From Mizuhopecten yessoensis (lineage: Eukaryota), in the NCBI RefSeq assembly GCF_002113885.1, contig NW_018408747.1:59655-123654 (forward strand): DNA of 64,000 bases, written 5' to 3'. Shown here piece by piece: positions 11,441-62,043 of the stretch; within the stretch, counting starts at the first letter, position 1; each line of letters opens with the position of its first letter. The notes under the pieces are model-generated. The model was given only the letters and a program-made list of their open reading frames with translations. It searched no databases and was not told where the DNA came from. A program made the position numbers and the translations under genes.

Positions 11441-11468
11441 CAGACTTCCGTCTCATTTTGTATAAATA
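11441..11468 (+). promoter_or_regulatory. Gene B core promoter: CAGACTTCCGT + 9 nt + TATAAATA
   Basis: Motif 11441-11451, TATA 11461-11468, non-coding exon ending at donor GT 11537. Confidence 0.75.
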
Positions 11469-12104
11469 AAGACCCTAATCTATCTTCCTCTGCACCACCT
11501 CTCCAGTCCTCCACCAGTATCTTCTAGCCAAGTCCGGTACGTTTTATATTAAATTGATTATGCTATTTTTTTTTATACATTAGACCTAATTATCATTAAA
11601 AAAATATTGTAATTATAATTAAATGAATTCAAGTTCGTTGTGAAATATCTTGATAATCATTTAAAGAATTATTGATTGCTTTTGTTTATATTCATACATT
11701 GCTTCATTGTCACTATACAATTTATTTTTGAGATATAACAAGAAGCTTTCCGAACAGAAAATTCATATATAAGGTATTCTTTAGATGTGTTTAACTGTTG
11801 AAAGCTAAATAAAATTGGATTCGGTATATATACTTAGTATCTAAGGGTAGGCAGAAAAATGGAATAGAAATTATTTTTCGGAACACTTATTCTTTAACTA
11901 AACGATTTATATGAAATTAGATGATTTGATTAGCTAAACCTTGTTAGTTCAAATGATTGTCGGAACAAAAGACACAAGTAGCATGTTCATCCTGTTAACA
12001 GTTTAACTTTTCGATTGNTGTCGGAACAAAAGACACAAGTAACATGTTCATCTTGTTAACAGTTTAACTTTTCGATTGTAAGGTATTCCTTTCAGAACGC
12101 AAAA

Positions 12105-13901
12105 ATGAACACCTATATATGTATGTGTTTGGCTTCATGCCTCTTGGTCGCTGTAAGCGCTGCAGGTAAGAATCATTTTACAAAATAATCAATTTTTGAT
12201 ATTATGTATGAAATATAATAAAAGCTGAATTTTGAAATAAAAAAATAAATTAAAGTATAAACTAGTAGACTTCCAACAGATTAAGATAGTAATACCTTTA
12301 TTTACATTGATTCTGTAATCATGAATTATCAATATGATTTTACAAATTTTAATGTATTTAAAAAAGCTTTGTACTTTTTGAAAATTTAGAAAAGCAAAAT
12401 GAAATAATAGTATGAAACAGGAGACTTCCATNCTTTGTACTTTTTGAAAATTTAGAAAAGCAAAATGAAATAATAGTATGAAACAGGAGACTTTCATAAA
12501 TTTAAAAATATCAATACCTTTATTTACATTGATTTTATAATAATGCATTATCAATATAACATTCCATAATTAAAATAGGTTTGTAAGTTCAGTTTGAAGC
12601 TTTTGTAATCATCATTTTATGGTATGACTTGACAATCTTTGGAATGGCGCATATTAATAATGAACAATAAATTATTTCATTAAAGATATATTTACTGTAA
12701 TCAAATGCTAATGTGATTTACGCAATATCTATTACTGACAGGATATGGAAATGGATTCGGAAACGGAAATGGTAACGGAAATGGCGGCGGAAATGGTAAC
12801 GGCAATGGCGCCGGAAAAGGATACGACAATGGCGCCGGAAACGGTTACGGCAATGGCGCCGGAAACGGATACGGCAATGGCGCCGGAAACGGATACGGTA
12901 ATGGCGCCAGTAACGGCGGTGGACGTAAGTTTTTATTTAATAAATTATCATATAAAACGAACAGAAAGTGATTCTGATAAATGATTTCAAGATTTATCAA
13001 ATAAACTACACTGAAAATAAATATCTTAAATAATTTGAGTGGATCACACTGTAAACTGTTGGTTTCTTAACCAATATATTTTTATGATAAGGATTTGTTG
13101 ATAATCTGTTTCAATATACACTGACTGGTGGGTCAGCCTATACACAAAGTAATACAATTTGCTGTTATAAAAACACATGTTGAAATATCTATGTTTAAAA
13201 TTTTTGATATTGTGTACTTTTTATTTCAGGTTACAGGAGAGCTGGTAAGTTTTCAACGTTTTTCATGCCTGATATTTTCAATTGGAGGTAGTTAAATATG
13301 AAGAGATATGTGATGAAAATTAGATTTTATAAAATAAAATGCAGAATAATCATTTTTATAACAGGAATATCAAATAATAAAGTGATGTTATCCGACATAA
13401 TGGTTTTTATAAGGTTACGGAGGTGGTGCCGGCTCTATGGGCGGAAGTTTCGGTGGCTCCGGAATGGGAGGCAACGGTGGATTCGGAGGAATGAATGGAG
13501 GCGGATTCGGAGGTATGAACGGAGGTGGATCCGGAGTAATGGGCGGTGGAATAGGAGGCAAAGGCGGATTCGGAGGAATGAACGGAGGCGGATTCGGAGG
13601 AATGGGCGGTGGAATGGGAGGCCAAAGTGGACTCGGAGGAATAAACGGAGGCGGATTCGGAGGAATGGGCGGTGGAATGGGAGGCCAAAGTGGATTCGGA
13701 GGAATGAACGGAGGCGGATTCGGAGGAATGGACGGTGGAATGGGAGGAGGAAAAGGTAATAATGAACATGTTTGATATATCTCAAACGAAGAAAAAAATC
13801 AGATACATGTATGTCGCTTTTAAAATATTTATTAATAACCGTATCATGTGCATTGTATTGATTATTAACCGAACTTCCTTTTTTCTCTTTCAGGTTACTA
13901 G
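12105..13901 (+). CDS. Abductin-family two-domain precursor (gene B, 202 aa): signal, Gly/Asn/Tyr repeats, RYRR, Gly/Met abductin domain
   Basis: Exons 12105-12165 ([20 protein letters not shown]), 12742-12924 (GYGNGFGNG...(GNGAGNGY)n...GGG), 13230-13244 (RYRRA), 13414-13755 (GYGGGAGSMGG...GGK) and 13894-13901 (GY*). All introns GT-AG, phase 1; 609 nt open frame; AATAAA at ~13936 and ~13952. Confidence 0.88.
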
Positions 13902-16900
13902 ATGACTTGCCTGTTCGTTAAATCTTACAGTTTATAATAAAATGGATTTAAAATAAAATATTCGGAGAGAAAACATTTGTTGCTTGTATATGTTAATGTC
14001 CTTTTAAAATGGTTAGGTTCCTATTGCTATTTGATAACTTATAATAACAAATGGTGAAAGACAGAGAACAAACTTGTAAATGCCATAACAATCAGATGCT
14101 TGTAAAAGTGATATATTAAGATTTAACAGCATCACAAACATTGATATTAGTTTGTCAATTGATTCAAACTCATATTGATGTTTGTATCAACATATCGAAA
14201 CTGAAATATTTCCCGGTATCGTGTTACACTTTCTTGTCACTTCCTACCTTTGACCGTAACCTTGCAGCATCAGACCTCTCATATCTCAGATATTCCATAT
14301 CTACACTTGTAACTTCAGCTTACAATATGATTTGTATCCCTCAAAACATCATACCGTGTTACTGAAATACCAAATTATATAAGATGACAACTTGTTTGCC
14401 TATAGTGCATTTGTCTATTTTAAATTTTATTGCAGTGTAATTAACTTTTGGCATAATGTACCGTATATATTACCAGGAGATAATGGAGCAATCACTTGTG
14501 TGTACAAATTGTAATGTTCTCCTCGATTCCTGTTCCCATATCATAGAAAAGTGTGATAACAGTTTTGATAATCAGTCGTTTCCATTAGAGACATATTTTC
14601 AAATGGCAAATACAAACACCTTTGTAGCTAACACTGTCAAGTACTTGTGATAGTAAGAAACCTGTCTCTGTGAGTGCATTGTGGTTATCTGACGTCCTTG
14701 ACAGCACTTTCCAAGAAAAAAAGTTAAACAAAAGTAGTTCAATGAACTATAAATTATTCATATTTGGACATAATGATATACAAATGATAACCTTGTCGTA
14801 TATAATATTATATAATAATGCCATTACAAATTTAAACGGCTTTTATTTCTTTGCTAGGTAACAGATGTTAACAATCACGTGATAAAACATCTTGTCTACA
14901 TTCGTGTTGATGTGCTATTTCTCTATTCAGGAAATCTTAATGATGATTGAAATCAACAAGATCGCGGCGTTATTGTAAAATCTCTTGTACATAATGTCTA
15001 TGTTCATTTGGCTTTCTGCTCGCTCAAGGCTGTTCTTGGGAAAAGGTAAATTTCCAACTTTTGAGTGGGAATTGAAAGTAAAATAAAATGGAATGGGTAG
15101 ATATTTGTCAATATCACTCATGTATCTAGAATATCCTGTAACTTGAAAATTTTCTGAAAGTGTGAATCAACTTGATATAATTTAGGTGGAAGTTGTTATA
15201 TTACTTCAAATGAATAACACATAAAGTCGATACTTCTCAAAGAAATAGTACAAAACGGTATTAACTAATTTCCAAACTGTTGTTGTTGTGTGTTTTTGAC
15301 TGTAATTGTTCATTGTTTCCCTCTACAATTTAAAACCAACATACTACTGTAGCTTTACACAAGTTCATATCTGTTGACACCTTGGCAGTAATTATCACTT
15401 CACCACAAAATTCTATTACTTACAAAAATGGTCGTTACGTTTTCTTCCCTCAAAATAATATTAGATATAACAGGTATATTGAAGCTATATAATATAGACT
15501 TTCCTTTGTACTTGTGTATCAGCTGTTCTGGTCTAGTATCTTGTTTCAGTGTGCTTACGCCGTTATGTAAGTCTCTTTTTCATGTATAGAACAACCAAAT
15601 GCTTTGTACAAATATGGCTTGAATTTATACACTGTTGAACGGTTAACTTGCATTCCATATAGTTGGCAGGTAACACTGTAATATAGATTGAGCTTATAAA
15701 AAGTTGTGTCGGTGTAATGGTTAAGAATATATGTAAATCTACGACATATAGGGCTACTACAGAAAAATAGCGACCATGTTGAACCCTTGAGCTATATTTT
15801 GATGTTTCTTTTACATACTATGTTAAATGAGTTATTTTGTCCCCGAACTTACGTTGTATACCTTATTCTGATATGGATAGCTAGAGATAAATTTCAAATA
15901 TATGAGAGTCCTGAAACTGCTTTTTTCGACGAACTGTTGAAATCATAGGCAAATGTTTGAAATTTCCCTACATTTTCTCCTCANTGAACCCTTGAGCTAT
16001 ATTTTGATGTTTCTTTTACATACTATGTTAAATGAGTTATTTTGTCCCCGAACTTACGTTGTATACCTTATTCTGATATGGATAGCTAGAGATAAATTTC
16101 AAATATATGAGAGTCCTGAAACTGCTTTTTTCGACGTACTGATGAAATCATAGGCAAATGTTTGAAATTTCCCTACATTTTCTCCTCGACCGGCGTTAGT
16201 GTTTTGAGATTACTGATTATAACTATTCCTTTGATTTACCGTTCTCTATAAAACACCTTTTATCAAAACACATAACCATAACGAAATTTACATTACTGAC
16301 ATCTCTTGTCTATAAAAAAATCCTTCTCAGCCATTTTCAGTCTTTCCTAGTTTTCCAGGACTTCTTTCCAGATCATGATGCTACATCCATTATTTCTGTA
16401 AATAACCATCGCCGACATAAACAAATATGCCATTATCTATAAAAAGACTAAACATATACTGCCATTTCCCTTCACTAACAAAAGTCTTTTGACCAAACTC
16501 AGTCTCAGAGAAGCAGCGATAACCTTCAATTCAACCGTTTTAATATAATATTCACATAGTTTTGAATAAAATGATCCTCGTTTACTTTGTCAGTTTTACT
16601 GTTCCCCATAAACACAAACAATTAATCATCTGGATTAGTAAAGCAATGACTATATAGTTGAATCGTAAGGGTAGAAGTTATTTTATGTTGTAAATACTGT
16701 GTGAATAGAAAAAAACAACTCATCAACACGTATGTAGTTAATATAATTCATCACGTGACTTCTGTTGTCTTTGCTAGTGCTTACAAATACGGCATGTGAT
16801 GAATAAGCACTCATCGTGTCTAGCCGTTCAGTCCGTCGTTCTTCTAATAACTGGACTATTTAGGCTAAATTGGTGTTTGTTTTGAATAGAAAAAAATAAC

Positions 16901-17861
16901 TCATCAACACGTATGTAGTTAATATAATTCATCACGTGACTTGTAACATGTGTTTCCTCCTGAAAGAAATAACAATAATCTCAATTTGTTTTATATACAA
17001 TTATATGCAGTAATATATATTCAAAACGTATATCATTTTATAAAAGTATGAATAATAAATTTTTCGTGTTCAACCAATCATTTCTATTGTCTTTACAAGT
17101 TCTTACAAAGACGTCATGTGATAAAAAAAGCACTCATCGTGTCTAGCCGTTCCATCCGTCGTCCTTCTAATAACTGGACTATTAAGGCTAAATTGGTGCG
17201 CGTTTTGAAGAGTGACTATTGGACAAACACGACTAATTTTGACACATTTTTCCATTTATTTATGCATACAAAACATGGTCTCATTATGTCTTATTAGGTA
17301 AGTTTCGATATCTATCAAGTTTTAGCATGTGTGTGAGAAGGGGGCCTAACAAGGTCCTAAATTGATGGGAACAGTGTTCTAAGAGAGTTGGTTGATATTC
17401 ATTTTGACAATCGTTTTTCCCTGTTTGAATAAAGATATTTTCAGTATTAGTGATCCTCTAGAATTAAGCAGATCATATTTTACTTCACGCTTGCCTCTTT
17501 CGTAATTGATTTATGCATCCATACACTACAACGAATGGAAAAAGGGTCACCCTCTATTGGGAATTGGCATCAGATTGACATAGGGTTTCCAAAGAGTTAA
17601 CACGAAATGGAATGTGTATGGAAGGTTTAAATAAGAAAATGAAGATTAAAACAAGGATATATATTTTCCTGCTTTGCTAGGTTAAATTATAATTAGTAAT
17701 AAAATATGAACATATTTTGTTCAACCAATCGTTGCCTCTGAAACTTGGGCCTGCTGACAGAGACCTATATATGCAAGATACACACACATGACCGTGCACC
17801 GTTCTCATTATAACACGAACCTATCTGTATTGGTCATATTGCTTTGTACTGGCCATACAAG

Positions 17862-18009
17862 ATGATGTCTCTGACAGAAACGACTGAGTATGACAACTTT
17901 GACCCGGAGTGCTACATGAAAACCCACGATTGGTCTACCTCTGAGGAAGAGGAAGAAAGGATCATATTTCAATTCAATGTGGATTTTATGCATGATCTTT
18001 TTAATTCAG
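17862..18009 (+). pseudogene. NNMT/INMT-family methyltransferase, orphan exon 1 (unit 1)
   Basis: Near-identical to exon 1 at 50703-50850, with donor at 18010. Exons 2 and 3 are absent: at ~19325 the sequence jumps to DNA that lies downstream of exon 3 in unit 2. Confidence 0.85.
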
Positions 18010-18080
18010 GTAATTGTGAGATAATATTATAGGACTCTTTTATGCCCAGGGGTGTATTGTAGGAAAATTCCGCCCGAGGG

Positions 18081-18827
18081 TTTTTGCGATCACTTTTTGT
18101 CCGTCGTCGTCCGTCGTGCGTCCGTAAACAATTTACATTTTCGACTTCTTCTTCAAAACCCCTGAACCAATATCAATGAAATTTTGCAGGAACCTTCCAT
18201 GGACAAAGGTCAACAAAACTAGTGGCCGGTTTAGTCCCAAGCCCACAGGGGCCTGAGGGGCGGGGCCAAAAAAGACTCGAATTGACTGAAATTTCAAAAA
18301 TCTTCTTCTCAAGACCCAGATATGGTAGAATCAAATACTCTTCATAGATGGAATGGACTTAAGGTGCTTTACCAAAAATGTGAATTTCATGACCCTGGGG
18401 TCTCACGTTTACCCCTGGGGAGGGGGTAAACTTTACTATAGTTTATTTCGGGAAGGAGGGGGGGATTTTTATTATGATTTATAATGGCAAATGATACTTT
18501 GAACATAACATGTTAATAACTTGATTGGAATTATGACATTGAGTTGACAGTTTGATACTTTGAAAAGTTTGAGCCAGCCCTACCCTCAAGGGCTGTAGGG
18601 TGGGGCCCAAATGAGTCAGTGTGCTAAAATGTCTTCATTTTCCTTGTTTAGAATCAGAGGTGCTAGTTTCAAATACTTTTTAGTCTTAAATCTGTATGCT
18701 AGATATTGAATAAGGTGGTTTTATTGTTTTTTGTCAATTTGAATAATATTTCTGTTCAATTTAAAAACAAAATCAACTCTCTGTATAAATATATCAGTTG
18801 ACCGTTAAGGCCCATGGGCCTCTTGTT
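18081..18827 (+). mobile_element. HINE/pearl-type element inserted in methyltransferase intron 1
   Basis: Absent from the paralogous sites in units 2 and 3. Starts in a T-run, contains (ccgtcgt)n, and ends with a ggcccatgggcc hairpin + tcttgtt. Confidence 0.75.
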
Positions 18828-19009
18828 ATCTCATTCCAACTACCAGAATACGATAAGATACCATGACAATGCGTTTTGATTGGCGAAAATTAAAGTATAA
18901 ACTACAAAATATAATACAGAAACATCGTTTTGACAAACAACTACATAATAAATATAAATATAAACCTTATTAATTTTACAACAATTATGAAACAAGTTAT
19001 TTCAACTTA

Positions 19010-19185
19010 TATTAATCACCCCGGATGTAAGCGTTCGTAGGGTCTTAATGTGGGAGAAACACTTGGAGAATCCAAGTGGTCGGGCAGATAATCCTATACC
19101 TTTCCGAGTCCGATAGGGGAATTGAAACCCGGTCGTCTTGGTAAAAGGCGAGTGCGCTATTCACTGCACCACCGCACCACCCGAC
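19010..19185 (-). mobile_element. tRNA-derived SINE (degenerate)
   Basis: Minus strand ggtggtgcagtgaatag (A-box-like) and gggtttcaattccc (B-box-like); related to the SINE at 43055-43282. Confidence 0.65.
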
Positions 19186-19419
19186 CCCCCCCCCCCNNNN
19201 NCTAACTACTACTTCGTCCATATTTTCAACTTGAGTTGTTTAAATCAACACTAAATGCTTATTCATAACAACGTGTTTAAGACTTATGATACTTCAGTAT
19301 CTATAACAAATATTGACTTTCTGTTACTATACTGCTAAAGCCCTCGGTCTGATATTGGGTCCTCGGGCTGATATGGCATATGATATGGTTTTAACCATGT
19401 AATATTCTCTGTTTATCAG

Positions 19420-20150
19420 AAAATTTGATATTAGTAGAATAACACAATTGCGACATCTCAACGAAGTGAATTGGAGTAGAAATACACTAAATCGACATCT
19501 CAGGCGATTTGATAGGAGTAGAGTTACACTATTGCGACATCTCAGGGAATTTGATAGGTGTAGAAATACACTATATTGACATCTCAGGTGATTTGATAGT
19601 TAGTAGAATAACAATATACGAGTAGAAATACACTAGTGTAATATCTATGGTAATTTAATAGGAGTAGATTTACACTATTGCGACATCTCAGGGGATTTGA
19701 TAGATGTAAAATAACAATATACGAGTAGAAATACACTAGCGTAATATCTCAGAAGTAAATAGGAGTAGAAATACACTATTGCGACATCTCATGTGATTTG
19801 ATACTAGTGTAGGAGTAGAATTACACTATATCGACATCGCAGGTGATTTTATAGTAGCAGAATTACACTATATCGACATCTCAGGTGATTTGGTAGAAGT
19901 AGAATTACACTATATCGACATCTCATGTGATTTGATAGGAGTAGAATAACAATAAACGAGTAGAAATACACTAGTGTAATATGTTAGGGAATTGGACAGG
20001 AGTAGAAATACATTATTGCGACATCTCAGGTGATTTAATAGGGGTAGACTAACTCTGTTGCGACATCTCATGTGATTTGATAGGAGTAGAGTTACACTGT
20101 TGCGACATCTCAGGTGATTTGATAGGAGTAGAATTACACTATTGCGACGT
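19420..20150. repeat. 42-bp minisatellite (unit 1)
   Basis: Unit ttgataggagtagaattacactattgcgacatctcaggtgat, about 17 degenerate copies; gives 14-aa periodic ORFs. Confidence 0.9.
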
Positions 20151-20379
20151 TTATTTGTCAAGTGGGATGACACTCCGTATAGCATTATCACTAATAGGCA
20201 TCCATTACACTTTCGCGGCTGTTACAAGGTCACAGTTACAGTGCGAAGATAACAAAACTGGGTCGATGACGATGAGGCGGTAATTCCCAGGTAATGACCG
20301 CTAGAGAAAACAGCCGGATACGACTGTTGCATAATAGCATTGTTTATTTATAAATATTATCAATATTTATATTATATAT

Positions 20380-21050
20380 GTAGAGGTTACACAACAAGTG
20401 ATTGTTGAATATGGTATTTATTTCACTCGCGTTAGTTAATTTTCAAAAGTTACAAAAGACACGAGTTTTAGATGAACTACTGTAAATATTGAGAGCATGC
20501 AATATTGCATTAATTAATATGAATTAACCACGGACTATATGCGCGTAAGCATATCGTACGAAGTCTGCCTCCCGCCAAGTGATGAAGACGAACTAATCGC
20601 TGTCAATATGTCCAAAACCATAGGCCTGGGACGTTTCTTCGTTAGGTTCTATGGTTGACGTTTATAGTGAGGGCTCGCCATAGACAGGCCCTCCAAATAT
20701 TGATAACGGGACATGGGGAGAACGTCTCTGGGTTTCACGACCTGGACACGCGACGGTATGCCGTCGAAACGATATCGAGCGTCTGTAGCAGATTTGCGTG
20801 AAACTAGCGATCATATCTTTAAGCATCATCCTCTTTTGGTATTGCCTTGATAACCCCTTTTCCCATCGCATAACCTCACAAAAGTCGCCAACATTTGCCG
20901 GATGTTGACAGCAGTCGACGTAAAGAAAACAGCACGCGGCCTAAAGCTCGTGAAAAAAGTCGTCCGGTCAAGGTTCATCTTTTTGACCAATCAAAACTAC
21001 GGAAGTTCATATACCACGTGTGGTGTATAACTCATATTTATTCAACAGTC
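20380..21050. mobile_element. Putative non-autonomous DNA element with imperfect subterminal inverted repeats (paralogue ~40820-41560)
   Basis: gattgttgaatatgg...ttcactcg at the left versus cacgtgtggtgtataactcata...ttcaacagtc at the right. No coding capacity; absent from unit 3. Confidence 0.35.
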
Positions 21051-28696: not shown

Positions 28697-28712
28697 AATC
28701 CCACCGCTGCCA
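28697..28712 (-). other. Primer-binding site complementary to the tRNA-Leu 3' end
   Basis: TGGCAGCGGTGGGATT immediately inside the 5' LTR; complement of ...AATCCCACCGCTGCCA, the 3' end of metazoan tRNA-Leu(AAG/TAG). Confidence 0.8.
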
Positions 28713-39810: not shown

Positions 39811-39814
39811 AAAT

Positions 39815-50702: not shown

Positions 50703-52654
50703 ATGATGTCTCTGACAGAAACGACTGAGTATGACAACTTTGACCCGGAGTGCTATATGAAAACCCACGATTGGTCTACCTCTGAGGAAGAGGAAGAAAG
50801 GAGCATATTTCAATTCAATGTGGATTCTATGCATGATCTTTTTAATTCAGGTAACTGTGAGATAAGATTATAGGACTCTTTTATGCTCAGGGGTGTAGTG
50901 TATGAAAATTATTTTTTGTATCTCATTCCATCTACCAGTTTACGCTAAGATACCATGACAATGCGTTTGGACTGGCTACAATTTTCAAGAAAAATCGTTT
51001 TGACAAACAAGTACTTAGTCCATATTTTCTCATAGTCTCATATGTTTAAATCAACACTGAATGCTTATTCATCATAACTTGTTTAAGATCTATGATACTT
51101 CAGTATCTATAATAAGTAGATATAACTGACTTGCTGTTTGAATGTTAAAAAAATATTTTTTCTGATTTTAGTAGAGAAATCATGATATTACCTAAAACGT
51201 GTACTTTTTTATACCACCATGTTCACGTCTTTTTATTTTGTTCTGATATACTTTTGGTCCATCTTGTCTTTTTTTGTTCCGCTTTCGCATCTTGTCCTGA
51301 TATATTGACGCTGTGTTCAGTATTTGAATTCACATTTAAGTCAAACTTCATGTTAAAATTATTATGATATAAATAATACTGACATCTCTACAGAAACCAC
51401 GAAAACATGGTACCGTGCTCCGGAGGTGATATAATTTCCTTCATCACATGAAGTTTCGTGATGATGTCCACACGCCAGCAAGTATGACTAATAGGTCATC
51501 AACGAAAATAACATGAAAATGAATACGATAATGTCATCAAATAGTAGCTAATAGAAAGCAGAAAGCTCTGATCATAGTCGTAAATGTTGTATTTCACTTT
51601 GGTGACTTGACATATTGATTAATAGGTAGTAACATATATTCCTATTTTTAGAAACTTTGCCACTGTTATTGTTTTGAATTTTACCAGGTGTCATAAAAGG
51701 TCATACCTTACTGGACATTGGAACGGGTCCGACCATCCGAACTGTGGTCAGTGCCAGCGCCCACGTGCATGAAATATATCTCAGTGACGTATCTCAACGA
51801 AATCGAGCTGTAATGACTGACTGGTGGAAAGGTAATAGCATGGCTGAGGCTGAACTTACGGATTACGTCTTAAAGAGAGAAAATGCAAGGTACATCCAAT
51901 TATATGTATAACTGAAACGCATTCATCATATGATTAAAATGCAGGCTGCAGTTATATAGTTATATAATATTTTAAAATTGTAAAAAGAAAACAGCCAAAA
52001 ATGTATGAATTTAGCGTAGCATTAAGACTAGCGTTTCAAAGGATTTTCACCTGTGTAATACATTAGGGGAAATCAGGCATGCGAAAACCTGCCAAAGAAC
52101 GAACAATTCAATGTTTATACAATTGTAATTCATACTAATAGTAGTACAATTATGCATCTAGAAACAAAACATATTAATATTTCAAACATTTTTTTTTAAT
52201 TACTCAATTGTTATTTGAACCCTTACGATAATTAAAATTATGTATTCATTTAAGGCATTCAATAGCAGACAGACAGGAAATGATTAAAGCAAAGATTCGC
52301 GGAGTTCTTCCTATCGACGTCAGATCCGGACATCCGTTAGGCAAGAGAGATCATCCTCATCAGTTCGACGTAATAACAACGTGTCTCTGTTTTGAATCAG
52401 CTGCACAGACGACAGAAGCTTATCGTCAGGTTGTGCAAAATGCTGCTTCTTTGTTGAAAGTTGGCGGTCATTTGGTGGTCATCGGTATCTTTGACACCAC
52501 CCATTACGAAGTTGGAGATTTCAAATTCATGTCTGTTTCACTATCGCAAGAAGAAATAGAACAAATATACAAAACGTGTGGATTCCGCATAATCTATATC
52601 ACTCGAAAGGCCACAGGTAAAAGTTTTGCAATGCATGCGGTCAAGACAACATAG
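50703..52654 (+). CDS. NNMT/INMT(TEMT)/PNMT-family SAM-dependent methyltransferase (249 aa, ORF intact)
   Basis: Exons 50703-50850 (YDNFDPECYMK), 51688-51889 (KGHTLLDIGTGPTI, SAM motif I; EIYLSD) and 52255-52654 (DVITTCLCFESAA; SLLKVGGHLVV; HYEVGDFKF). GT-AG introns, phases 1 and 2; 750 nt. Colinear with human NNMT motifs (FNPRDYL, KGDLLIDIGSGPTI, DCVLSTLCLDAA, LLKPGGFLVI). No signal peptide. Confidence 0.92.
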
Positions 52655-53726
52655 ATTGTTCTATGCTGATAATAATGTATTGTAGTATATATAAACCAAA
52701 GCGATATCTCAGGTGATTTAGCTTGCAAGTCTTACTCGAATATTATAATTATGAAATTAGTTAAACAGACATGCATTTATGTGTTATAAGATATCGTAGG
52801 TTTGTATATAGACTGCTTATGATGATTATCAGAGTTTGGTGACTGTCTTTATGCAGTTTGAATTTCTGGCAATTTAATATGTTTCATGCCAGGAAACACT
52901 TGGGGTCGTTATTATTATAATTGAAGTTTTAACTCAGTCTCTTGTAATCCATCTCCTTCATTCTTCAAAATAGTTATCATGTAAAAACATTTGCCAATGA
53001 ATATCTATACATACCTTTGTATGTATTTTCTGGTTTGGAGAAGACTTTAATATTGTGCAGTCATTTTTATTTCTTAATAAAATTTGTTGAAATTTAAGAA
53101 ATTCTTCTGGTTGTGATGGATCTACGAATCATCTTTGCAAGATATTTATATATAATATGAACTCATATGAATTCATTATGATACAAATCCAGCTGTTACG
53201 CGAAAAAGGAAATAAATTAATAAATCATAAATATATAAACTTCAAATCGACCAGCAAACCAACGACATGAAAAGAAAAGGAAATTTATTGATGCAACTAG
53301 TTATGGCAATTGCAATGAACATGGACCACCTTTTAATTAATGGTTGTAGATTCATTTATATATGAATACAGATGAATTGATATCTATGTAATATAATGGT
53401 GACATGGTACTGTTAGTGTATTTATTTTAGCGCACCCTATTTCAGCGGAACGAAGATGGAATGACTTATTAGCGCACTTTTAAATTAGTGGAATCGCAGT
53501 AACTAAACTCCTTTATTCAGCAATTTGTTTTAATTTTCTATAAAATTGGCAAACTGAGTGTATAACGAATTGAATGCCGAGTGAGGTACAACCGCTGAAT
53601 ACCTTGGAACAAAAAAACAGTCTTTCCTTCACGTATGTATGCCATTGAGCTGTTGCCAGTAACTGTCGAGTGAAACCCTACACGTATGGTATGGATACCA
53701 TGTGCTTTGTGGTCTGATTTTAGCAG

Positions 53727-54763
53727 AGGCACTGTAGTCCAGTGATAGGACACCGGGCTCATACACGAAGGGTTGCGGGTTCGAGTCACGTCACGGCAAT
53801 GCTTCATTAAGGATATATCAGACACAATGTTAAAACTTGGAATACACTCGTTCTTTCTTAAATGTGTTCATGCAGTTCAAGATAATGGAAGCTCTTTGTG
53901 AAAAAACATTACAGAACAGTTTTATTGCCATGAATGGTGTTGTGAATGATTGTACAATGTGCTACTAAGTCATTTTAAGTGTATACATCCGTATATGGGC
54001 CCCAACCCTCTGAGGGAATTGAGCTTGAAATATCCAAAACTGACATGGACACTTGCAGAATTAGTAAAGCTCTCATATCGGACAGGGGCTGATTGTGTAA
54101 TTTGTAAACTGTGCCGTAAATCAACAGCCAACATAGCAGCAGTTGGGATAAGCTTTTAGAGCATGTTGTAAATACGCTAAAGGTTGTTGATTATGTTAAA
54201 ATTGATATGTTGGAAGAAGACGATCAGTACCTGTTTCTCTTAGGTAGTAGAGAATGGTGATGGAAATAGATGATGATGGATGGGAGAACTGCATCATCGG
54301 ATTTGCACGCTGTGTAGAGCACATGCTTTCTAAAGTTAACATTTGTCGTGGTAAGTAAATCTCAATTTTTGAGAGGTCAGTTATACTGACCAATATAGTG
54401 TGTAAATAATCTGCAGTGTTGATAACAATATGACATGTATATACCATGTTTTCTATAATTGAAAAGAGCTAATTATTGTAAAAGTTCACTTATGTAAGAC
54501 ATGTAATCTCTATTTGGAGGAAATAAAGGATGTGCTCGTCTGTCTGTCGTGGTTGGGCAGTGCTGGAATTGTGGAATGCTACATGTAGCTGTGAGCGCCG
54601 AAATGGCAGCATCAGCTGTATGCTCTTCAGGGAGTTGAGAAAGATATTGGCTGGTTGCATAGGCCCCATAACCACGGATGATAATTTGTGAACCGCTTTG
54701 AGACGACCTACGAACTAGGTTGTGTTAAAGCGGTAAATAAAGAACATCGAATTATTATTATTA
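53727..54763 (+). mobile_element. CORE-type SINE copy interrupted by ~750 bp of unrelated sequence (53798-54548)
   Basis: Head matches 22089-22160 and tail matches 22230-22437; the middle is replaced. Confidence 0.7.
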
Positions 54764-55614
54764 TTTTAGCTTTCGAGCTTGAGCAGGTACTTGTATTCGC
54801 GGACATGATGTAGCGCGAAAGCCGCTAAAATTACATTACCGCCAAAATATGTACATATATCTCAATAGGAAATAGTTGCGACTTTACTCTGCAACTCTTG
54901 ATCTAATGATACCTTTAATTACTTTAAACTGTAAAGAGTTATTATGTTCTTAGCATGAGTGCAAAATTATGTTGATCTTCGTAAATTACAAATATCAAGT
55001 ATGCATCTAGCAACATTTGTGCTTATGTTGATAAGTGTGATATCAGCGACCTGATTACTTTTAAGGTTTGCACACTTTCGGATCGGACTTGATTATATAC
55101 AATGTGATTAATTTTCAGCTATAGGCGTAGAAAACTCGTGCACATCTGGATATTCTCGATTTGCTGTATACCGATTGATGCTGCGATTACAGCCGGAGTG
55201 TGGCGAGTGACTTAAACAGGTATGAATCCTTGGTAGTTTAATACTGTGTTAACACAGATGGTCGCTATTATCTATGTGATTCAAATCTGTCCTATGGCCA
55301 TTATCCCCCTTTTTGCTTGAATACAAAATGAGTATGCATAGCATTTATCGATTTATGTATACCTATACATACATGTGTATGTATTTCCTAGCAAAGAGAT
55401 GCTTGATTTATTGTCAAGTCTTTTTTAGTGCTTAATAAAATTTGCATTAATATGCATTCCGTATATTTATACATTTTAAGCAGAGCTGGTACGACTATGT
55501 CATTGTGTGAATTTATACATGAATATTTATAAGGAAATATTAGACCGGAACACACAACGGTAGGAACAGAAACAGAAATCTCTTTAAAGCGTATTGATGT
55601 AAGCCAGCTAGAAC

Positions 55615-55845
55615 AACTCTGTAGGTGGCGCAGTTGATAGGGCACTCGTCTTTCACCAAGGCGATGGGGTTCAATTCCCCGATCGGACGTGATGAGACAT
55701 TGGGTCAACTACTCGGCAACGTGTGTTTTTTCCGGGAACTCAAGTTTCCTCCCACACTTCGACTCCCTGAGCGCTTTCGTCTGGGCCAAAAAGAGTGTTT
55801 ATTACTCGTTACACATTTGTTGTAAACAAACTAAAAATTAATTAA
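55615..55845 (+). mobile_element. V-type tRNA-derived SINE (third segmental copy)
   Basis: tggcgcagttgatag, ggttcaattcc, ttttccgggaactcaagtttcctcccac. Confidence 0.75.
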
Positions 55846-57694
55846 AACACTTTCTTAAAGCGAACAACAACAATTGTATTTATGGCCCAGTTGTACGTTT
55901 GATATTTTTTATGACAGACACAAACTGAACTGTAATAAACATCATCTTCCTCATCCCATCTCTCTTATATTTGCAAACAAAATAACGAATAGTATCTTGC
56001 CAAACGAAGAAAGGCTGCAATACCTTATAAAATGTTTGTTCAAACTCTTCATAAGCTGTAATTTCGAACCAAGTAAGTGTTGTTTTTTCATACGTCAATA
56101 TGTGCCTTTGTTTAAAAGCATACATTTCGCCTTTCCGCGATAGGGAACGAAATAATCAGCAAAAGCCTCGGGTTCGACAATTAAAACATCACCTCTCAGG
56201 TTGGAATCATCTATGTTGTTTTCTTTGGCATTGGGTTCAGCAGAGCAATTTCAATGCCCCTTTAAAAGTAGAAGAAAACACCCGATTCCGCAGGTTGCCA
56301 CACATCAGTCGCCTCTTACGATAACATGCTATGGCATTAAGCAGGCCTATTTTCCCCCATAGTTACAAGACTGGATATCTTCGCCACACCTTCAAGGAAG
56401 TTTAGATCATATTAATCTAAATTAGAAGTAAAGGATCGGAGAAGTATCTTATTTTCCATCTGAATAGCCCGTTTTCATTTCGCTTAATAAAAATGGAAAA
56501 ATAGAACACTTGGACTATAAAAATGGTATATAGTGTTGAAATATGATGGCATAATTCCATGAGTGTTCATTGAAAAAATTGTATCTTTTTTTCATTTGAA
56601 AATAGGCATATATTTCACACTTCTTACTTACCATAACAGATTGTGTATAAGATTATCAATGTTAGAATATGGATAATTTAAAAACGAAAAATTGAAGAAA
56701 GTATACTAATGCTGGTTTGCTTTTTCTTTAGATTATATAGTGAATACAGTTTTCAAATTACTGAATCTAAAATTTGTCAATTCAATACTGCAAGCGAGGT
56801 GAAATTTAAAACCCCGCTCTCTGCCCTTTTTTATTTCTTCAATTTTCAAATTTACAACAGAGCGATTCAAAGGGGCAAGCTCAACTTGTCAATAATATTG
56901 CTAACATTTCAAATGGGAAAACACTTGCTTCGTTACATATCTGTTCAATAGTGTTACTAAGATAAAAATATATTTAAAAACAAATGTTTTACATCGTGAA
57001 ACAATACCAAAGGGTTATAAAACCAAGCATTAAGTTATAATTAGATCCAACTAAACACAAATAAAAGTAATGGGCCTATGCGTCATCTAGAACATGCTAA
57101 CTACTTACACCTGATTACGTGTACAGGTAGTTACAACTAAGCGAAGTCTGGATATAACAATTATTAATAGATCATTAATTCTATCAGGTGTTCAAACCAA
57201 ATGATTGCGTTTTGGTAAAACAGTTCCGCACGATCTGACCAGACCAATTCAAGGACCTAGCATGTGCAGACTTCCGTCTCATGTTCCATAAATAGACCCT
57301 AGTCTTTAGTTCTCTGCACCACTTCTCCTGATCCACCACCAGTGCCTCTGGACTCAGTTATGCTTTGCATATATTAATGGGGGAAAAAGGGAAAAAAAGG
57401 TCCGCAATGACACCATACGATATATGAGAGAGATCTGTTGAGCAGAAACATAGCATGTACAACATATATCTTTACAAGTATCCTGGACGTTGATAGCCAG
57501 TTGGCGCATAGTTTGTTTTTGGTAAATCAGTCCAATAAGAGCCAACGATGGTTTACGAAAGTTGATCATTCATTTGTTGGAACCTTGTTAGTCTAAATGT
57601 TTGGTTCGTTAAAATATAAAAAGTGATCCGTTCCTTCCTATCGTTAATTTTATTTAACTTTACATTATATAGGTATTCCTTTCAGAACAGTACA

Positions 57695-58450
57695 ATGAAC
57701 ACCTTTATCTGTGTGCGTTTGGCTTCATGCCTCTTGGTCGCTGTAACCGCTGCAGGTAAGCATATCTTTGCAAAATAATTATATTTGTTTTCAGGAAAAT
57801 AAGACACAAGTTGTTCAAAACTTATTTACGATAACTGTTAAACCGTTATATTAGAAACAGGGTCCGTTATCAATTTATTTATTTATGTTGATTCTATGAA
57901 TTATCAGTATGGATATCCAAATCCTAATGTAACAAAACATACCTTATACCTAAGTAAGGGGTGTTCTATGAAAATAAGTGTATGACATGATTTGACAATC
58001 CTTCGAATAGCACATATACTTAATGAAAAACAAAAAATTGTATTCAATAATCAACTGCAAATGCGTCATAATAAGTATATTTTACTGACAGGCTATGGAG
58101 GTGGACCTGAAAACGGAAAAGGTAACGGAAATGGATACGGAAATGGCGCCGGAAATGGAACGGCAATGGCGCCGGAAATGGTAACGGCAATGGCGCCGGA
58201 AATGGATAGGACATTGGCGCTGTAAAAAGTGGATTCGAAGGTAGACGTAAGATTGTATCTATTAAAATAATAAATGGAATATCTGATGAGAAAAGGGTAA
58301 TGATAAACTTGTATATTTAAATATCTACATAGAACATATTTTATGACGACAATTTACAAGTATGCCGTTATAAAATTTTGTAAATAACAATATTTTATGC
58401 ATATGATTGATTTCTATCCTAGCATTTGTTTTTCGCTTTTAGGTTACTAG
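57695..58450 (+). pseudogene. Abductin-family Gly/Asn gene E, pseudogene
   Basis: Signal exon 57695-57755 (Arg in the hydrophobic core). Gly/Asn exon 58092-58246 is 155 nt, with a 1-nt deletion near 58159 and a TAG in the corrected frame. Terminal exon 58443-58450. TATA mutated to CATAAATA (57287). Confidence 0.85.
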
Positions 58451-58502
58451 ATGACTGGCCTATTTGTTTGACATTTCAATTAATTATAGCATAGATTAAA
58501 AA

Positions 58503-60140
58503 TAAATGACCAGTGAAGTGGCAATTGTGGCTACGCTGTAAGCGTATTTACAATAGTTGTTATATATACTTAAATGACTCGATTCAGCTACGCTTTGTTG
58601 TATTTGAGCACCCTCGTCTCGAATTAGAATTTGCCCACTGCGGCGTATCCAGATGGCTTTCTTTATTTGCCGCTCTCTCTGTCTCTATACCAGTCAATCA
58701 CATGATTCCTCTGTGTGGCATGTTCTGTGATTGTCGATTTATTTATCTGGGACTCCGACTGTTTCCTTTCTGATCTGGCGAATTTCCTGCCTTCTTGGGT
58801 TTCTGTATCTTTGCGGTGTTCACAAAGGCGGACCCCCAACACGCCTTCCAGTCTTTCCGATTTTGTATACGCATTCTGCGATGTTTTATTAAGGTGTTTT
58901 ATCCTTCGGGTGTACAAGGATATTGCGAAGCGTCTTGTGGGGCTTCATGTCTGTTTCTTTGCCATTACCGCGATATCTCCTCTAGATGGTTTCGGATATA
59001 TCCTTTATACGCGGGATGACCACTTGACCTTTGCTTTTGTTCTTATCCTTGATTGGCATCTACTTGTTCTTCCCATCATTTTGACACTGTTTTTGTACCC
59101 GTGCTATGGCCCCTTCCGGATATGATATGCACACGTTCTCATTGACCCAGCGATATGAATATACTCTTGTGTTTTGTCCTGTTGTTCTGTGACTATTGTA
59201 TCACATCTATTGAGCAATGTCCGTACGACGCCTAACTTCTGGTGCAAAGGATGGTGACATTTGAAGTTCAGGTATTGGTCTGCATGGGTCTTTTTTCCTT
59301 AGACCAATACCTTCACGGTTCCGTCTTCTTTTTTTACCAGTAGAGTGTCTAGGAAGGGCATTGCGTTGGTTTCTGTTTCTTCCTCACTTGTAAATTTGTT
59401 GTTGTCAGTGGCATCTATGGTGTTGATAATTGGGGTCAAATCTTTCTGTGAACGCCTTCTTGATTATCTTAAGTATGTCGTCAACATATCGTTTCCATAA
59501 GCTAGGCTTGCATTCTATGGGGGCAGTGTCTAATGCTTCTTTCTCCAGATGTTCCATGAACAAATTGGTCACAATGGGAGACACTGAACTACCCATAGCA
59601 GTGCCGAAGCGTTGTTGATCGATGTTTTTTCGAAAACTAAAATATGTTGTTGTCAGCACAAATTCGAGCAAATCCATGATGTCCTGAATCTTGAGGTTAG
59701 TGTTTTTGCGCCAGGATCTGTCTAATTCAAAGCGATTCCGAATGATTCAGTCAATGCGTCGTCAATGGATGTGTTGGTAAGAGAGACAACATCACGTGAA
59801 ATGAATTCTTCGTCTTCCTGAATCATGATGGAAGACATAGCTTCCGCTAGGGCTCCAAGACTCTTGCACATCTATGACCAAGAATTAAACAAAGCGTAGC
59901 TGTATCGAGTCATTTCGGTACATATATAACAAATTTTGAGCATACGCTTACAGCGAGCCGAAATCAACATCGATTTTGTGGACAACACGTACACATGTTA
60001 CACCTTTGTGTGCATACGCTTCACTGGTCATTTGTCTGATGAAGGTAATAGTGTACATATCGTACTAGTCATCGAAACGTCACATAGAAATTGTATTGGT
60101 TGTGTAAAAGGAACTTTTCATAATCCATACTTACCAACCT
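58503..60140 (-). mobile_element. Penelope-like retroelement, 5'-truncated (RT + GIY-YIG remnant) with inverted terminal copy
   Basis: Minus strand YFSF...QQRFGTAMGSSVSPIVTNLFMEHLE...WKRYVDD; VRLCEHRKD...KSTITEHATQRNHVIDW. Segment 58503-58605 is an inverted repeat of ~59885-60035. Confidence 0.88.
60030..60086 (+). ncRNA. Minimal type-I hammerhead ribozyme motif, degenerate
   Basis: TGT-CTGATGA(60036-60042)-imperfect stem II-GAAA(60074-60077)-CG-TC-ACA; palindromic ACGT helix III; lies in the Penelope terminal repeat. Confidence 0.55.
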
Positions 60141-60171
60141 GAAGAAAATATTTAGAAAAATTAAGATAAGT

Positions 60172-61287
60172 CCTCTACATATAGAGCTACCCGTGACTAA
60201 GGTTAGTCGTTTATATGTGGGGCTAGTAGTGACTAAGGTTAGTCGTACACATATGGAGCTAGTAGTGACTAAGGTTCGTCGTCCACATATGGAGCTAGAC
60301 GTGGTCTACAAAGGGAGCTACACGTAACTAAGGTTAGACGTCTACATATGGAGCTAGTAGTGAACTCCGTTAGTCGTGTACATATGGAGCTAATAGTGAC
60401 TAAGGGTAGTCGTTTACATATAGTGCTAGTAGTGACTTACGTTAGTAGTCTGCATATGGCGCCAGTAGTGACTTACGTTTTTCGTCTACATATGGAGCTA
60501 ATAGTGACTAAGGTTAGTCGTTTACATATGGTGCTAGTAGTGACTAATGTTAGTCGTCTACATATTGTGCTAGTAGTGATTAAGGTTAGTCGTCTACATA
60601 TGGAGCTAGTCGTGGTATACAAAGGGAGCTACACGTAACTAAGGTTAGTCGTCTACATATGGAGCTAATAGTGACTAAGGTTAGTCGTCTACATATTGTG
60701 GTAGTAGTGACTAAGGTTAGTCGTCTACATATTGTGCTAGTAGTGATTAAGGTTAGTCGTCTATATATGGTGCTAGTAGTGACCAACGTTAGTCGTCTTC
60801 ATATGGCGCTGGTGAGACTTATGTAAGTCATCTACATATGGCGCTAGTAGTGACTAACGTTTGTTGTCTACATATGGTTCTGGTAGAGACTAAGGTAAGT
60901 CGTCTACATATGGTGCTAGTAGTGACTTACGTTAGTAATCTGCATATGGCGCTAGTAGTGACTTACGTTAGTCGTCTACATATGGCGCCAGTATTGACTT
61001 ACGTTTTTCGTCTACATATCGTGCTAGTAGAGACTAAGGTTAGTTATCTACATACGGCGCTAGTAGTGACTTAGGTAAGACGTCTACACATGGTGCTAGT
61101 AGTGACCTACGTTAGTCGTCTACATATGGCGCTAGTAGTGACTAAGGTTAGTCGTCTACATATGGCGCTAGTAGTGACCTACGTTAGTCGTCTACATATG
61201 GAGCTAATGAGACCTTTGTAAGTCATCTACATATGGCGCTAGAAGTGACCTACGTTTTTCGTATACATATGGTGTTGGTAGAGACTA
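60172..61287. repeat. 36-bp minisatellite, about 30 copies
   Basis: Unit gtgactaaggttagtcgtctacatatggtgctagta with an internal GACTAA-gg-TTAGTC palindrome; gives 12-aa periodic ORFs. Confidence 0.92.
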
Positions 61288-61662
61288 TTTTCTGACGTCA
61301 TTTTGCAAATATTCCAATACACCACATGGAATCTATTATGAAAAATATTTATATATTTTAGCAAAGTGTAGAGGATATATGATGAAGGGCTTCTAGCGTT
61401 TTTAGAATATTTTCATCTGTTTGATATATTGGAACGAATATGCATGTGCGTAAACATGTCTTCAAATATTTTGACTTGCAGAAATGTATGGTACATATAT
61501 GCTCGATGAACGAACAATATTATGCATTTACATCTTATCGGTGCCGTTAAGTATAATAGGAACTGAAATTATTAACATTTGAAACATTATAGTTTGGTTA
61601 CTGAGCGAGTAACATTTACGATACAAATAAGCCTTTATTGAAGTTATTTTTTTTAGTTTCAG

Positions 61663-62043
61663 ACATTTCGCAGAAGAAAAACAATAATAGATGAAAGCAA
61701 AGATTCGTGGACTTCTCCATTATGACGTCAGATCCGGACATCCGCTGGGAAAGGGAGATTACCCCGATCAGACGGCAGAGTCGTATCGTCAAGTTGTGCA
61801 AAATGCGGCTTCGTTGTTAAAAGTTGGTGGTCATTTTGTTGTTTTGGGTCTCCTTAACAACATTCATTATGATGTTGGACGTTTCAAATTAATGTGTGTT
61901 TCATTGTTGCAAGATGGAATTGAAAATATATACAGAACTTGCAGATTCCGCATAATCAATATCACTCGAAAGGCGAGGAAGACAACTGAAAACCAAGGAC
62001 GTGCAGTGAAAGCTTTGCGACACATGCCGCCAAGACAATATAG
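61663..62043 (+). pseudogene. NNMT/INMT-family methyltransferase exon 3 relic (unit 4)
   Basis: Acceptor at 61662, in-frame TAA TAG at 61685-61690, internal deletion of the FDVITTCLCFESAA motif, C-terminal frameshift. Exons 1 and 2 are not seen. Confidence 0.85.

What the first reader, a model, noticed from the sequence alone, without database searches (positions are those of the whole stretch)
11441..62043. Abductin + NNMT/INMT-type methyltransferase cassette repeated four times in tandem
Seen: promoter modules at 11461, 31512, 44758 and 57287 (period ~13 kb after subtracting the 6.6-kb LTR element). Each is followed within 3-4 kb of the abductin-family stop by a same-strand methyltransferase gene or relic. 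Established: abductin is very Met-rich; hinge ligament has been reported to contain methionine sulfoxide and a 3,3'-methylenebistyrosine cross-link; this enzyme family methylates pyridine/amine nitrogens and thioethers using SAM. Inference: this could be a structural-precursor plus tailoring-enzyme cluster, handling Met/SAM flux or making a methylated small molecule used in ligament tanning. The enzyme lacks a signal peptide, so direct modification of the secreted protein is less likely. Passive co-duplication remains plausible because three of four enzyme copies are dead.
Basis: partly seen in the sequence, partly recalled or inferred. Interest (0 to 1): 0.72.

Follow-up and report, generated by a model that had tools for sequence, protein, structure and literature searches.

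The report
Duplicated scallop abductin–methyltransferase gene block
A 13-kb block holding a hinge-rubber (abductin-type) gene and a small-molecule methyltransferase gene was copied four times in the Yesso scallop and then decayed, leaving two whole abductin genes and one working enzyme gene; this looks like ordinary co-duplication of neighbours, not a purpose-built gene pair.

Summary
The window (Mizuhopecten yessoensis, contig C5420) carries a tandem ~13-kb unit four times. The TATA/exon-1 modules sit exactly at 11461, 31512, 44758 and 57287 and occur nowhere else in the genome. Each unit once held a secreted abductin-family gene and, about 4 kb downstream on the same strand, a three-exon NNMT/PNMT/TEMT-family methyltransferase (MT).

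The decay is complementary. Units A and B keep whole abductin genes but have dead MTs. Unit C keeps the only whole MT (249 codons) but lost the Gly/Met repeat exon of its abductin gene. Unit D is a relic of both. RNA contigs from two studies carry the MT-C splice junctions I had predicted, so the gene is transcribed. Two deep RNA runs show no reads on its exons.

The "precursor plus tailoring enzyme" reading gets no support:
- The contig holds at least 11 Gly/Met-rich genes, and every canonical GFGGMGG motif placed on a sizeable contig lies there; only this unit has an MT.
- At least 16 other NNMT-like exon loci lie on other contigs. The two I could read have no abductin-like neighbour.
- The MT has its own TATA promoter and no signal peptide.

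Best reading: passive co-duplication with birth-and-death decay. Synteny in other scallops and tissue co-expression could not be tested.

The parts
11257..31500 (+). Unit A of the tandem array. It includes an inserted LTR retroelement at 23467-30051.
   Evidence: Self-alignment. A-B divergence is 0.051.
31400..44750 (+). Unit B of the tandem array.
44550..57300 (+). Unit C of the tandem array.
   Evidence: Divergence from A and B is 0.077.
57215..62104 (+). Unit D: an older copy with large deletions, 74-86% identical in the blocks that still align.
11441..11536 (+). Abductin-A promoter module (TATA box at 11461) and non-coding exon 1, ending at a GT donor. Equivalents: B 31490-31587, C 44738-44833, D about 57267-57345.
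   Evidence: Alignment, motif positions, only 4 copies in the genome.
12096..13775 (+). Abductin-family gene A, coding exons. Exon 2 at 12096-12165 holds the ATG (12105) and the signal peptide. Exon 3 at 12742-12924 holds Gly/Asn/Tyr octapeptide repeats. The micro-exon is at 13230-13244. Exon 5 at 13414-13775 holds GGFGGM-type repeats and the stop.
   Evidence: The reading frame is continuous across canonical GT..AG sites. This model is inferred; it was not checked with RNA.
32211..33800 (+). Abductin-family gene B, complete. Exons: 32211-32280, 32790-32972, 33228-33242, 33415-33800.
45347..46156 (+). Abductin-family gene C, truncated. It has exon 2 (45347-45416) and a lengthened exon 3 (45926-46156). 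The micro-exon and the Gly/Met exon are deleted.
57686..58240 (+). Abductin-family relic D. Exon 2 (57686-57755) is open. Exon 3 (58092-58240) has a 1-base deletion and a stop. No later exons remain.
17862..18009 (+). MT relic A. Exon 1 is still open. Exons 2 and 3 were lost in a deletion whose junction lies at about 19306/19334.
37806..38891 (+). MT relic B. It has exon 1 (37806-37953), the last part of exon 2, and exon 3 (38456-38891) with a TAA at codon 2 and a TAG in the C-terminal loop. It lacks the stretch matching C 50903-51824.
50703..52654 (+). MT-C, the one intact NNMT/PNMT/TEMT-family gene. Exons: 50703-50850, 51688-51889, 52255-52654, giving 249 codons. A TATA-like box lies at about 50605-50614. 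An alternative first exon ends at 50130.
   Evidence: tblastn, frame and length, Pfam, spliced RNA contigs in X1 and X2.
61664..62000 (+). MT relic D. Exon 3 only, with a 45-nt loss of the FDVITT..CFESAA segment and a frameshift near the end.
23467..30051 (-). LTR retroelement inserted in unit A. The LTRs are 23467-24740 and 28712-30051. The gag-like, RT, RNase H and integrase frames are fragmented.
   Evidence: The LTRs differ at 19 of 1273 aligned bases.
7194..7940 (-). A separate canonical abductin gene (repeat exon) on the opposite strand, outside the array and without an MT.

Best explanation
The window holds a young tandem array made by unequal crossing-over inside the scallop's single abductin gene cluster.

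The repeated unit is about 13 kb. It happened to span two neighbouring, independently transcribed genes. One encodes a secreted abductin-family protein with a signal peptide, a Gly/Asn/Tyr octapeptide domain, a 5-codon micro-exon and GGFGGM-type repeats. The other encodes a cytosolic small-molecule methyltransferase of the NNMT/PNMT/TEMT family.

The order of copying is inferred from divergence: D split first, then C, then A and B. The LTR element entered A last.

After each copying, redundant copies decayed independently. The MT was kept as one working copy (C) and destroyed by three different lesions in A, B and D. The abductin gene was kept whole in A and B, truncated in C and destroyed in D.

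The MT is therefore a passenger of abductin-gene amplification, not a dedicated partner.

Shown: the array, the gene models, the lesions, the intact ORF and splicing of MT-C, and the distribution of both families in the genome. Inferred: the mechanism (unequal crossing-over), the order of events, and the absence of a biochemical link.
For: Array and modules.

Divergence: A-B 0.051, A/B-C 0.077, D about 0.15 or more. The LTRs are 98.5% alike.

Independent lesions in the MT copies: A is a deletion. B is a 922-base deletion plus two stops. D has a 45-nt loss and a frameshift.

MT-C: 148+202+400 nt gives 249 open codons. PF01234 scores 42.8 bits for exon 2 and 87.1 bits for exon 3. The LLDIGTGPT motif and the following LSD align to INMT, PNMT and NNMT structures. 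RNA contigs of two studies carry the junctions 50850|51688, and X1 also carries 51889|52255.

Protein evolution: the MT-C branch (0.076) is shorter than that of relic B (0.13). C-B dN/dS is 0.58; C against the C5244 paralogue it is 0.18.

Family distribution: PF01234 exon hits lie on 9 other contigs. The GFGGMGG motif occurs 32 times in the genome, against 1 for the control. All hits are on this contig at 16-93 kb or on two contig scraps. More than 11 Gly/Met-rich genes lie along 1-190 kb of the contig, and only units A-D have MT sequence.

Promoters: no similarity between the abductin and MT promoters.
Against: MT-C is the only NNMT-like gene inside the only abductin cluster. It has been kept open and spliced since before the D split (C-D dS about 0.6).

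Its protein is unusually diverged, at 54-60% identity per exon to its closest scallop homologues over exons 2 and 3, against 76% for another paralogue's orthologue. It has an in-frame 12-codon loss and changes in a segment that aligns with the substrate-pocket helix of human NNMT. These could reflect a new role.

Tissue of expression is unknown because run labels are coded. Linkage in other scallops was not tested.
Confidence: 0.75

Rival explanations
1. Functional cluster. The MT is co-expressed with the abductin genes in ligament-forming epithelium and serves them, for example by handling methionine/SAM flux or by making a methylated small molecule used in ligament curing. One enzyme copy is enough for several structural genes.
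For: MT-C lies inside the sole abductin cluster. It is intact, spliced and evolves more slowly than its dead sister. Its expression is low or restricted: it is absent from two deep RNA runs and present in two others. Abductin cross-links are still unknown (PMC9999432), so there is room for unknown chemistry.
Against: No MT copy survives next to the two whole Met-rich genes. At least seven other cluster genes have none. The promoters are separate and dissimilar. There is no signal peptide. The family is large and otherwise unlinked to abductin. No paper links the two.
Confidence: 0.1
2. Bystander co-regulation without a biochemical link. Because MT-C sits within the regulatory landscape of the abductin cluster, it is switched on in the same cells as a side effect.
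For: MT-C lies 4.5 kb downstream of a strong-looking TATA promoter module of truncated gene C, on the same strand. Its expression is low.
Against: No chimeric or read-through contig was seen. RNA contigs start near the MT's own TATA-like box, at 50639, or in its own alternative first exon. Co-expression was not measured.
Confidence: 0.1
3. Assembly artefact. The 'tandem' units are alleles or collapsed/expanded repeats wrongly joined in a draft assembly.
For: The assembly is a draft of 82,659 contigs. Single Ns and one 5-N gap lie in units A and B.
Against: The units differ by 5-8% and by large, distinct structural changes: the LTR insertion, different deletions and different minisatellites. 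This is far beyond allelic variation. MT-C exon 2 is unique to unit C and is found in independent RNA runs, and DNA runs hold most of the MT-C stretch's words.
Confidence: 0.03

Closest known systems
Abductin of Argopecten irradians (Cao, Wang and Bayley 1997, as summarised in PMC9999432)
   Same: It shares a roughly 20-residue N-terminal signal peptide, followed by a Gly-rich (about 60%), Met-rich domain of GGFGGMGGGX-type decapeptides.
   Different: Genes A and B carry an extra Gly/Asn/Tyr octapeptide domain and a 5-codon basic micro-exon between the signal peptide and the Gly/Met domain. Gene C has only the extra domain. Direct sequence homology could not be scored, because the low-complexity query gave no hit.
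Vertebrate NNMT / INMT / PNMT (PF01234; structures 2a14, 2iip, 1hnn)
   Same: It has the same family profile and a three-coding-exon gene. The SAM motif DIGxGPT and the acidic residue after strand 2 are kept. It is cytosolic, with no signal peptide.
   Different: Similarity to the vertebrate enzymes is low (phmmer 50-55 bits over 104 residues of exon 3). It matches NNMT, INMT and PNMT equally well, so no substrate can be assigned. A 12-codon loop near the C-terminus is deleted. The position matching NNMT Asp197 is Gly in my reading of the alignment; the residue numbering is from memory.
Birth-and-death evolution of tandem gene arrays (unequal crossing-over, then pseudogenisation of redundant copies)
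   Same: The units are in head-to-tail order with graded divergence. Lesions are independent in each copy, and one working copy of the passenger gene is retained.
   Different: Decay here is complementary between two unrelated genes of the same unit: abductin is kept in A and B, the MT in C. This is a tidy but not unusual outcome.
Other NNMT-like genes of scallops (M. yessoensis P0009 on contig C5244; Pecten maximus P0010 and P0011)
   Same: They fall in the same well-supported subclade (100/100), with the same exon structure and the same FAMxA-type C-terminus as P0011.
   Different: They are 47-60% identical per exon, 54-60% over exons 2 and 3. The C5244 gene has no abductin-like ORF within 10 kb.

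Membership tests
Abductin family | N-terminal secretion signal of about 19-20 residues | tested here: inconclusive
   Exon 2 encodes a 20-residue hydrophobic N-terminus ending in SAA, in all four units. No signal-peptide predictor was available, so this is judged from the sequence.
Abductin family | Repeats of the GGFGGMGGGX type | tested here: met
   ORFs at 13437-13775 and 33438-33800. The GFGGMGG DNA pattern hits A and B, with 32 genome hits against 1 for the control. The motif definition is from PMC9999432.
Abductin family | About 58-60% Gly with unusually high Met | tested here: met
   Exon 5 of A and B has Gly 0.59-0.61 and Met 0.11-0.12.
Abductin family | Scorable sequence homology to the founding A. 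irradians protein | tested here: inconclusive
   The word search scored 8000 candidates and none passed E 0.001. Composition correction defeats this low-complexity query.
Abductin family | Expression in ligament-secreting tissue, and presence of the protein in the resilium | not tested
NNMT/PNMT/TEMT methyltransferases (PF01234) | Profile match above the curated cut-off | tested here: met
   MT-C exon 2 scores 42.8 bits and exon 3 scores 87.1 bits, against a cut-off of 25. Relics B and D also match.
NNMT/PNMT/TEMT methyltransferases (PF01234) | SAM-binding motif I (DIGxGPT) and the acidic residue after strand 2 | tested here: met
   LLDIGTGPTI ... YLSD aligns to INMT 2a14, PNMT 1hnn and NNMT 2iip.
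NNMT/PNMT/TEMT methyltransferases (PF01234) | Complete, open, correctly spliced coding sequence | tested here: met
   MT-C only: 249 codons, with both introns removed in RNA contigs. A, B and D fail.
NNMT/PNMT/TEMT methyltransferases (PF01234) | Methyl transfer to a defined acceptor (nicotinamide, indolethylamines, phenylethanolamine, thioethers) | not testable with these tools
   It scores equally against NNMT, INMT and PNMT. An enzyme assay is needed.
Precursor-plus-tailoring-enzyme gene cluster | A working enzyme gene retained beside the structural genes it serves | tested here: not met
   A and B (whole abductin genes) have dead MTs. At least seven other cluster genes have none.
Precursor-plus-tailoring-enzyme gene cluster | Linkage conserved across species | not testable with these tools
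No other tool here reads other mollusc genomes.
Precursor-plus-tailoring-enzyme gene cluster | Co-expression or shared regulation | tested here: inconclusive
   The promoters are separate and show no similarity. MT-C RNA is present in two studies and absent from two runs, but the tissues are coded.
Precursor-plus-tailoring-enzyme gene cluster | Enzyme located where it can meet the secreted substrate | tested here: not met
   The MT-C N-terminus is acidic and hydrophilic, with no hydrophobic leader. This is judged from the sequence.

The most novel reading that the evidence does not exclude
MT-C is a fast-evolving, lineage-specific small-molecule methyltransferase, kept as a single copy inside the only abductin cluster because it acts in ligament-secreting cells. 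It might make a methylated metabolite or buffer Met/SAM demand during synthesis of a protein that is more than 10% methionine. That would make this an animal example of a structural-protein gene cluster with a resident metabolic helper.
Probability: 0.1. Interest if true: 0.65.

Novelty: new member of a known kind. Interest (0 to 1): 0.27.

Why it matters
As it stands this is an ordinary tandem array undergoing birth-and-death decay. It is useful mainly as annotation.

It shows that the Yesso scallop's canonical abductin genes sit in one cluster on one contig. It gives exon-level models for a sub-family that adds a Gly/Asn/Tyr domain. It also identifies which copies are genes and which are relics, including one live, transcribed NNMT-like gene that gene-finders could confuse with its dead sisters.

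For biomaterials work, the catalogue of abductin variants (Gly/Met, Gly/Met/Pro and Gly/Asn/Tyr types) is of some value.

The enzyme link would matter only if co-expression or conserved synteny were shown. Abductin cross-link chemistry is still unresolved (PMC9999432), so a genuine ligament-specific methyltransferase would be a concrete lead.

Tried and rejected
- **More paralogue neighbourhoods.** Only C81 and C5244 were inspected. I replaced this test with a genome-wide pattern search.
- **Abductin homology by protein search.** The result was blank because of low complexity. The own-genome protein search likewise found only A and B. Neither blank says anything about relatives.
- **The 36-nt repeat at 60135-61290 as a fourth abductin repeat exon.** Rejected: the unit contains stop codons in the repeat consensus, and it is a minisatellite.
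- **An in-frame TGA just upstream of MT-C exon 2 (one search flagged '1 TGA').** Rejected as a lesion: the stop lies in intron 1, 4 codons before the acceptor that RNA contigs actually use.
- **Loss of MT exons in unit A as an effect of the 5-N gap at 19197-19201.** Rejected: the deletion junction lies more than 100 bases beyond the gap, and intron-1 sequence continues on both sides of it.
- **Chimeric abductin-C/MT transcript.** No supporting contig or loose end.
- **Literature.** No paper links abductin with a methyltransferase, or treats NNMT/INMT-like genes in scallops or bivalves.
- **Joined protein.** All searches were exon by exon, so whether a database already lists the 249-residue protein was not checked.
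Full report
**Identity of the window**

The window is G000:C5420:59655-123654 of a 988-Mb, 82,659-contig assembly. Proteins encoded by paralogous loci of the same genome are named by NCBI as Mizuhopecten yessoensis proteins. The animal is therefore the Yesso scallop.

**Observation**

Self-comparison shows a head-to-tail array:
- Unit A, about 11.26-31.5 kb.
- Unit B, 31.4-44.75 kb.
- Unit C, 44.55-57.3 kb.
- Unit D, from 57.2 kb. It is shorter and older, and only a few blocks still align, at 74-86% identity.

Unit A is 6.6 kb longer because an LTR retroelement sits at 23467-30051. Its LTRs are 23467-24740 and 28712-30051 and differ at 19 of 1273 aligned bases. It carries fragmented gag-like, RT, RNase H and integrase frames on the minus strand.

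The four 'promoter modules' align over about 125 bases, with a TATAAATA box (CATAAATA in D) at exactly 11461, 31512, 44758 and 57287. A search of the whole genome finds these four copies and no others.

**The abductin-family gene**

After the TATA box comes a non-coding exon 1 ending at a GT donor. The coding exons follow:
- Exon 2 holds the ATG and a 20-residue hydrophobic leader. It is conserved in all four units.
- Exon 3 is made of 24-nt repeats encoding Gly/Asn/Tyr octapeptides.
- A 15-nt micro-exon encodes a basic RYRRA segment.
- A final exon holds GGFGGM-type repeats and the stop.

The frame runs continuously through canonical splice sites in A (12096-13775) and B (32211-33800).

The last exon is 59-61% Gly and 11-12% Met. 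That matches the published description of abductin: a signal peptide of about 19 residues, the [GGFGGMGGGX] repeat, 58 mol% Gly and high Met (PMC9999432).

Unit C has exons 1-3, but a deletion matching B 33211-33788 removed the micro-exon and the Gly/Met exon. Unit D has exons 1-2, a frameshifted and stop-bearing exon 3, and nothing more. The long 36-nt repeat in D (60135-61290) is a non-coding minisatellite.

These abductin models are inferred from sequence. I did not check them with RNA.

**The methyltransferase gene**

Pfam places the large ORFs at 52280-52654 and 61691-62104 in PF01234, NNMT/PNMT/TEMT. Using full-length scallop homologues (P0001-P0011) as tblastn queries, I found three coding exons.

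Unit C has all three: 50703-50850, 51688-51889 and 52255-52654. That is 148+202+400 nt, or 249 codons, open throughout.

The predicted junctions were then found in RNA:
- Contigs of two runs from two studies (X1, X2) join 50850 to 51688.
- X1 also joins 51889 to 52255.
- All have GT..AG ends.
- X1 also shows an alternative first exon ending at 50130, whose ATG would give a form lacking the first 49 residues.

Two deep raw RNA runs (X19, X24, about 12 million reads each) had no read on MT exons. Expression is therefore low or restricted. Tissue labels are coded, so I cannot say where.

RNA contigs begin at 50639, about 30 bases after a TATATATG box. That upstream region shows no similarity to the abductin promoter module. 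The N-terminus is acidic and lacks a hydrophobic leader.

Motif I (LLDIGTGPTI) and the following LSD align to solved INMT, PNMT and NNMT structures with similar scores. The family is clear, but the substrate is not.

**The other three MT copies are dead, each in its own way**

- A keeps an open exon 1 (17862-18009) and the start of intron 1. It then jumps to sequence that lies about 0.8 kb beyond exon 3 in B. The junction (about 19306/19334) is not at the 5-N gap.
- B keeps exon 1 but lacks the stretch matching C 50903-51824, which includes most of exon 2. It has a TAA at codon 2 of exon 3 and a TAG in the C-terminal loop, where P. maximus P0011 has Trp.
- D keeps only exon 3, with a 45-nt loss of the FDVITT...CFESAA segment and a frameshift near the end.

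MT-C itself has an in-frame 36-nt (12-codon) deletion in the C-terminal loop relative to B, D and all homologues.

On the exon 3 tree, the window copies fall in a 100/100-supported clade with the M. yessoensis C5244 gene and two P. maximus genes. The MT-C branch (0.076) is shorter than that of relic B (0.13). dN/dS is 0.58 for C against B and 0.18 for C against the C5244 gene. Polarising the C/B differences by eye with D and C5244 gives about 12 replacements on B and about 6 on C. MT-C looks constrained, though not strongly.

**Order of events (inferred)**

Aligned-block divergence is 0.051 for A-B, 0.077 for A-C and B-C, and about 0.15 for D in the few conserved blocks that still align. MT exon 3 dS for C-D is about 0.6.

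So D split first, then C, then A and B. The LTR element, whose LTRs differ by 1.5%, entered A after that.

**Context**

A degenerate DNA pattern for G-F-G-G-M-G-G hits the genome 32 times, against 1 for the reversed control. Every hit lies on contig C5420 between 16 and 93 kb, or on two tiny contig scraps.

A composition scan of contig positions 1-243,654 finds Gly/Met-rich open frames at about 7.6, 16.3, 37.3, 49.9 and 66.9 kb (minus strand), at the A-D units (plus strand), at 123.8 and 134.1 kb (minus strand), and at 164.4 and 186.3 kb (plus strand). The window therefore lies in the middle of the animal's abductin cluster.

PF01234 exon hits on this contig are confined to the window. At least 16 other C-terminal-exon hits lie on nine other contigs, several of them in tandem clusters. 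The 20 kb that I could read around each of two of these (C81, and C5244, the closest paralogue) has no abductin-like frame.

**Reading**

A 13-kb unit that happened to include two adjacent, independently promoted genes was amplified. Redundant copies then decayed.

The pattern is the opposite of what a dedicated pairing predicts. The whole Met-rich genes (A, B) have lost their enzyme. The live enzyme sits behind a gene that has lost its Met-rich exon. The rest of the cluster never had one.

One surviving enzyme copy could in principle serve the whole cluster, so a functional tie is not excluded. Nothing found here calls for it, though, and no paper connects the two. I put passive co-duplication at about 0.75. 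A real functional link and bystander co-regulation each get about 0.1.

**Limits**

- Reads were laid on MT-C, so abductin expression and co-expression are untested.
- The abductin protein search was blank because of low complexity.
- Spliced (joined) protein models were not submitted to any search or fold. All searches were exon by exon.
- Claims about human NNMT residue numbers rest on my memory, not on a tool.
The review I read says abductin cross-links are still unknown.

Noticed in passing
window 7194-7940 (-); contig C5420 at about 7.6, 16.3, 37.3, 49.9, 123.8, 134.1, 164.4 and 186.3 kb (loci L003-L005, L009-L017): The array lies inside a cluster of at least 11 Gly/Met-rich genes of several repeat flavours: GGFGGM, GGMGGGPF, and nearly pure Gly/Met with 27-44% Met. 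Every GFGGMGG motif placed on a sizeable contig is on this contig.
   Followed up: partly
window 50020-50130: An alternative first exon of MT-C is spliced straight to exon 2 in one RNA contig. Its ATG at 50118 would give a protein lacking the first 49 residues, which form the N-terminal substrate-side helices in NNMT-type enzymes.
   Followed up: partly
window 52600-52625 compared with 38830-38870: MT-C has an in-frame 36-nt deletion that removes exactly the loop in which relic B carries a TAG (Trp in a Pecten homologue). It could be a chance deletion, or one that rescued the frame.
   Followed up: partly
window 45926-46200: Truncated gene C keeps a lengthened Gly/Asn/Tyr exon (two extra 24-nt repeats). 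An AATAAA lies just after its donor, so it may still make a short secreted Gly/Asn/Tyr peptide. RNA was not checked.
   Followed up: no
window 31576-31793: In unit B a 111-nt tandem duplication doubles the exon-1 donor region of the abductin gene, giving donors at 31587 and 31696.
   Followed up: no
window 23467-30051: An LTR retroelement is inserted in unit A after the A/B split. The LTRs are about 1.3 kb and 98.5% identical, and the coding frames are broken into pieces. I only described it.
   Followed up: partly
window 19423-20148, 39806-40527 and 60135-61290: There are 42-nt minisatellites downstream of the MT position in units A and B, and a different 36-nt minisatellite (about 30 copies) in unit D.
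   Followed up: no
window 47700-48700: Unit C holds a retrotransposon-like fragment (ORF 48172-48696), absent at that place in A and B. Many slightly different RNA reads and contigs cover it, evidently from other copies in the genome.
   Followed up: no
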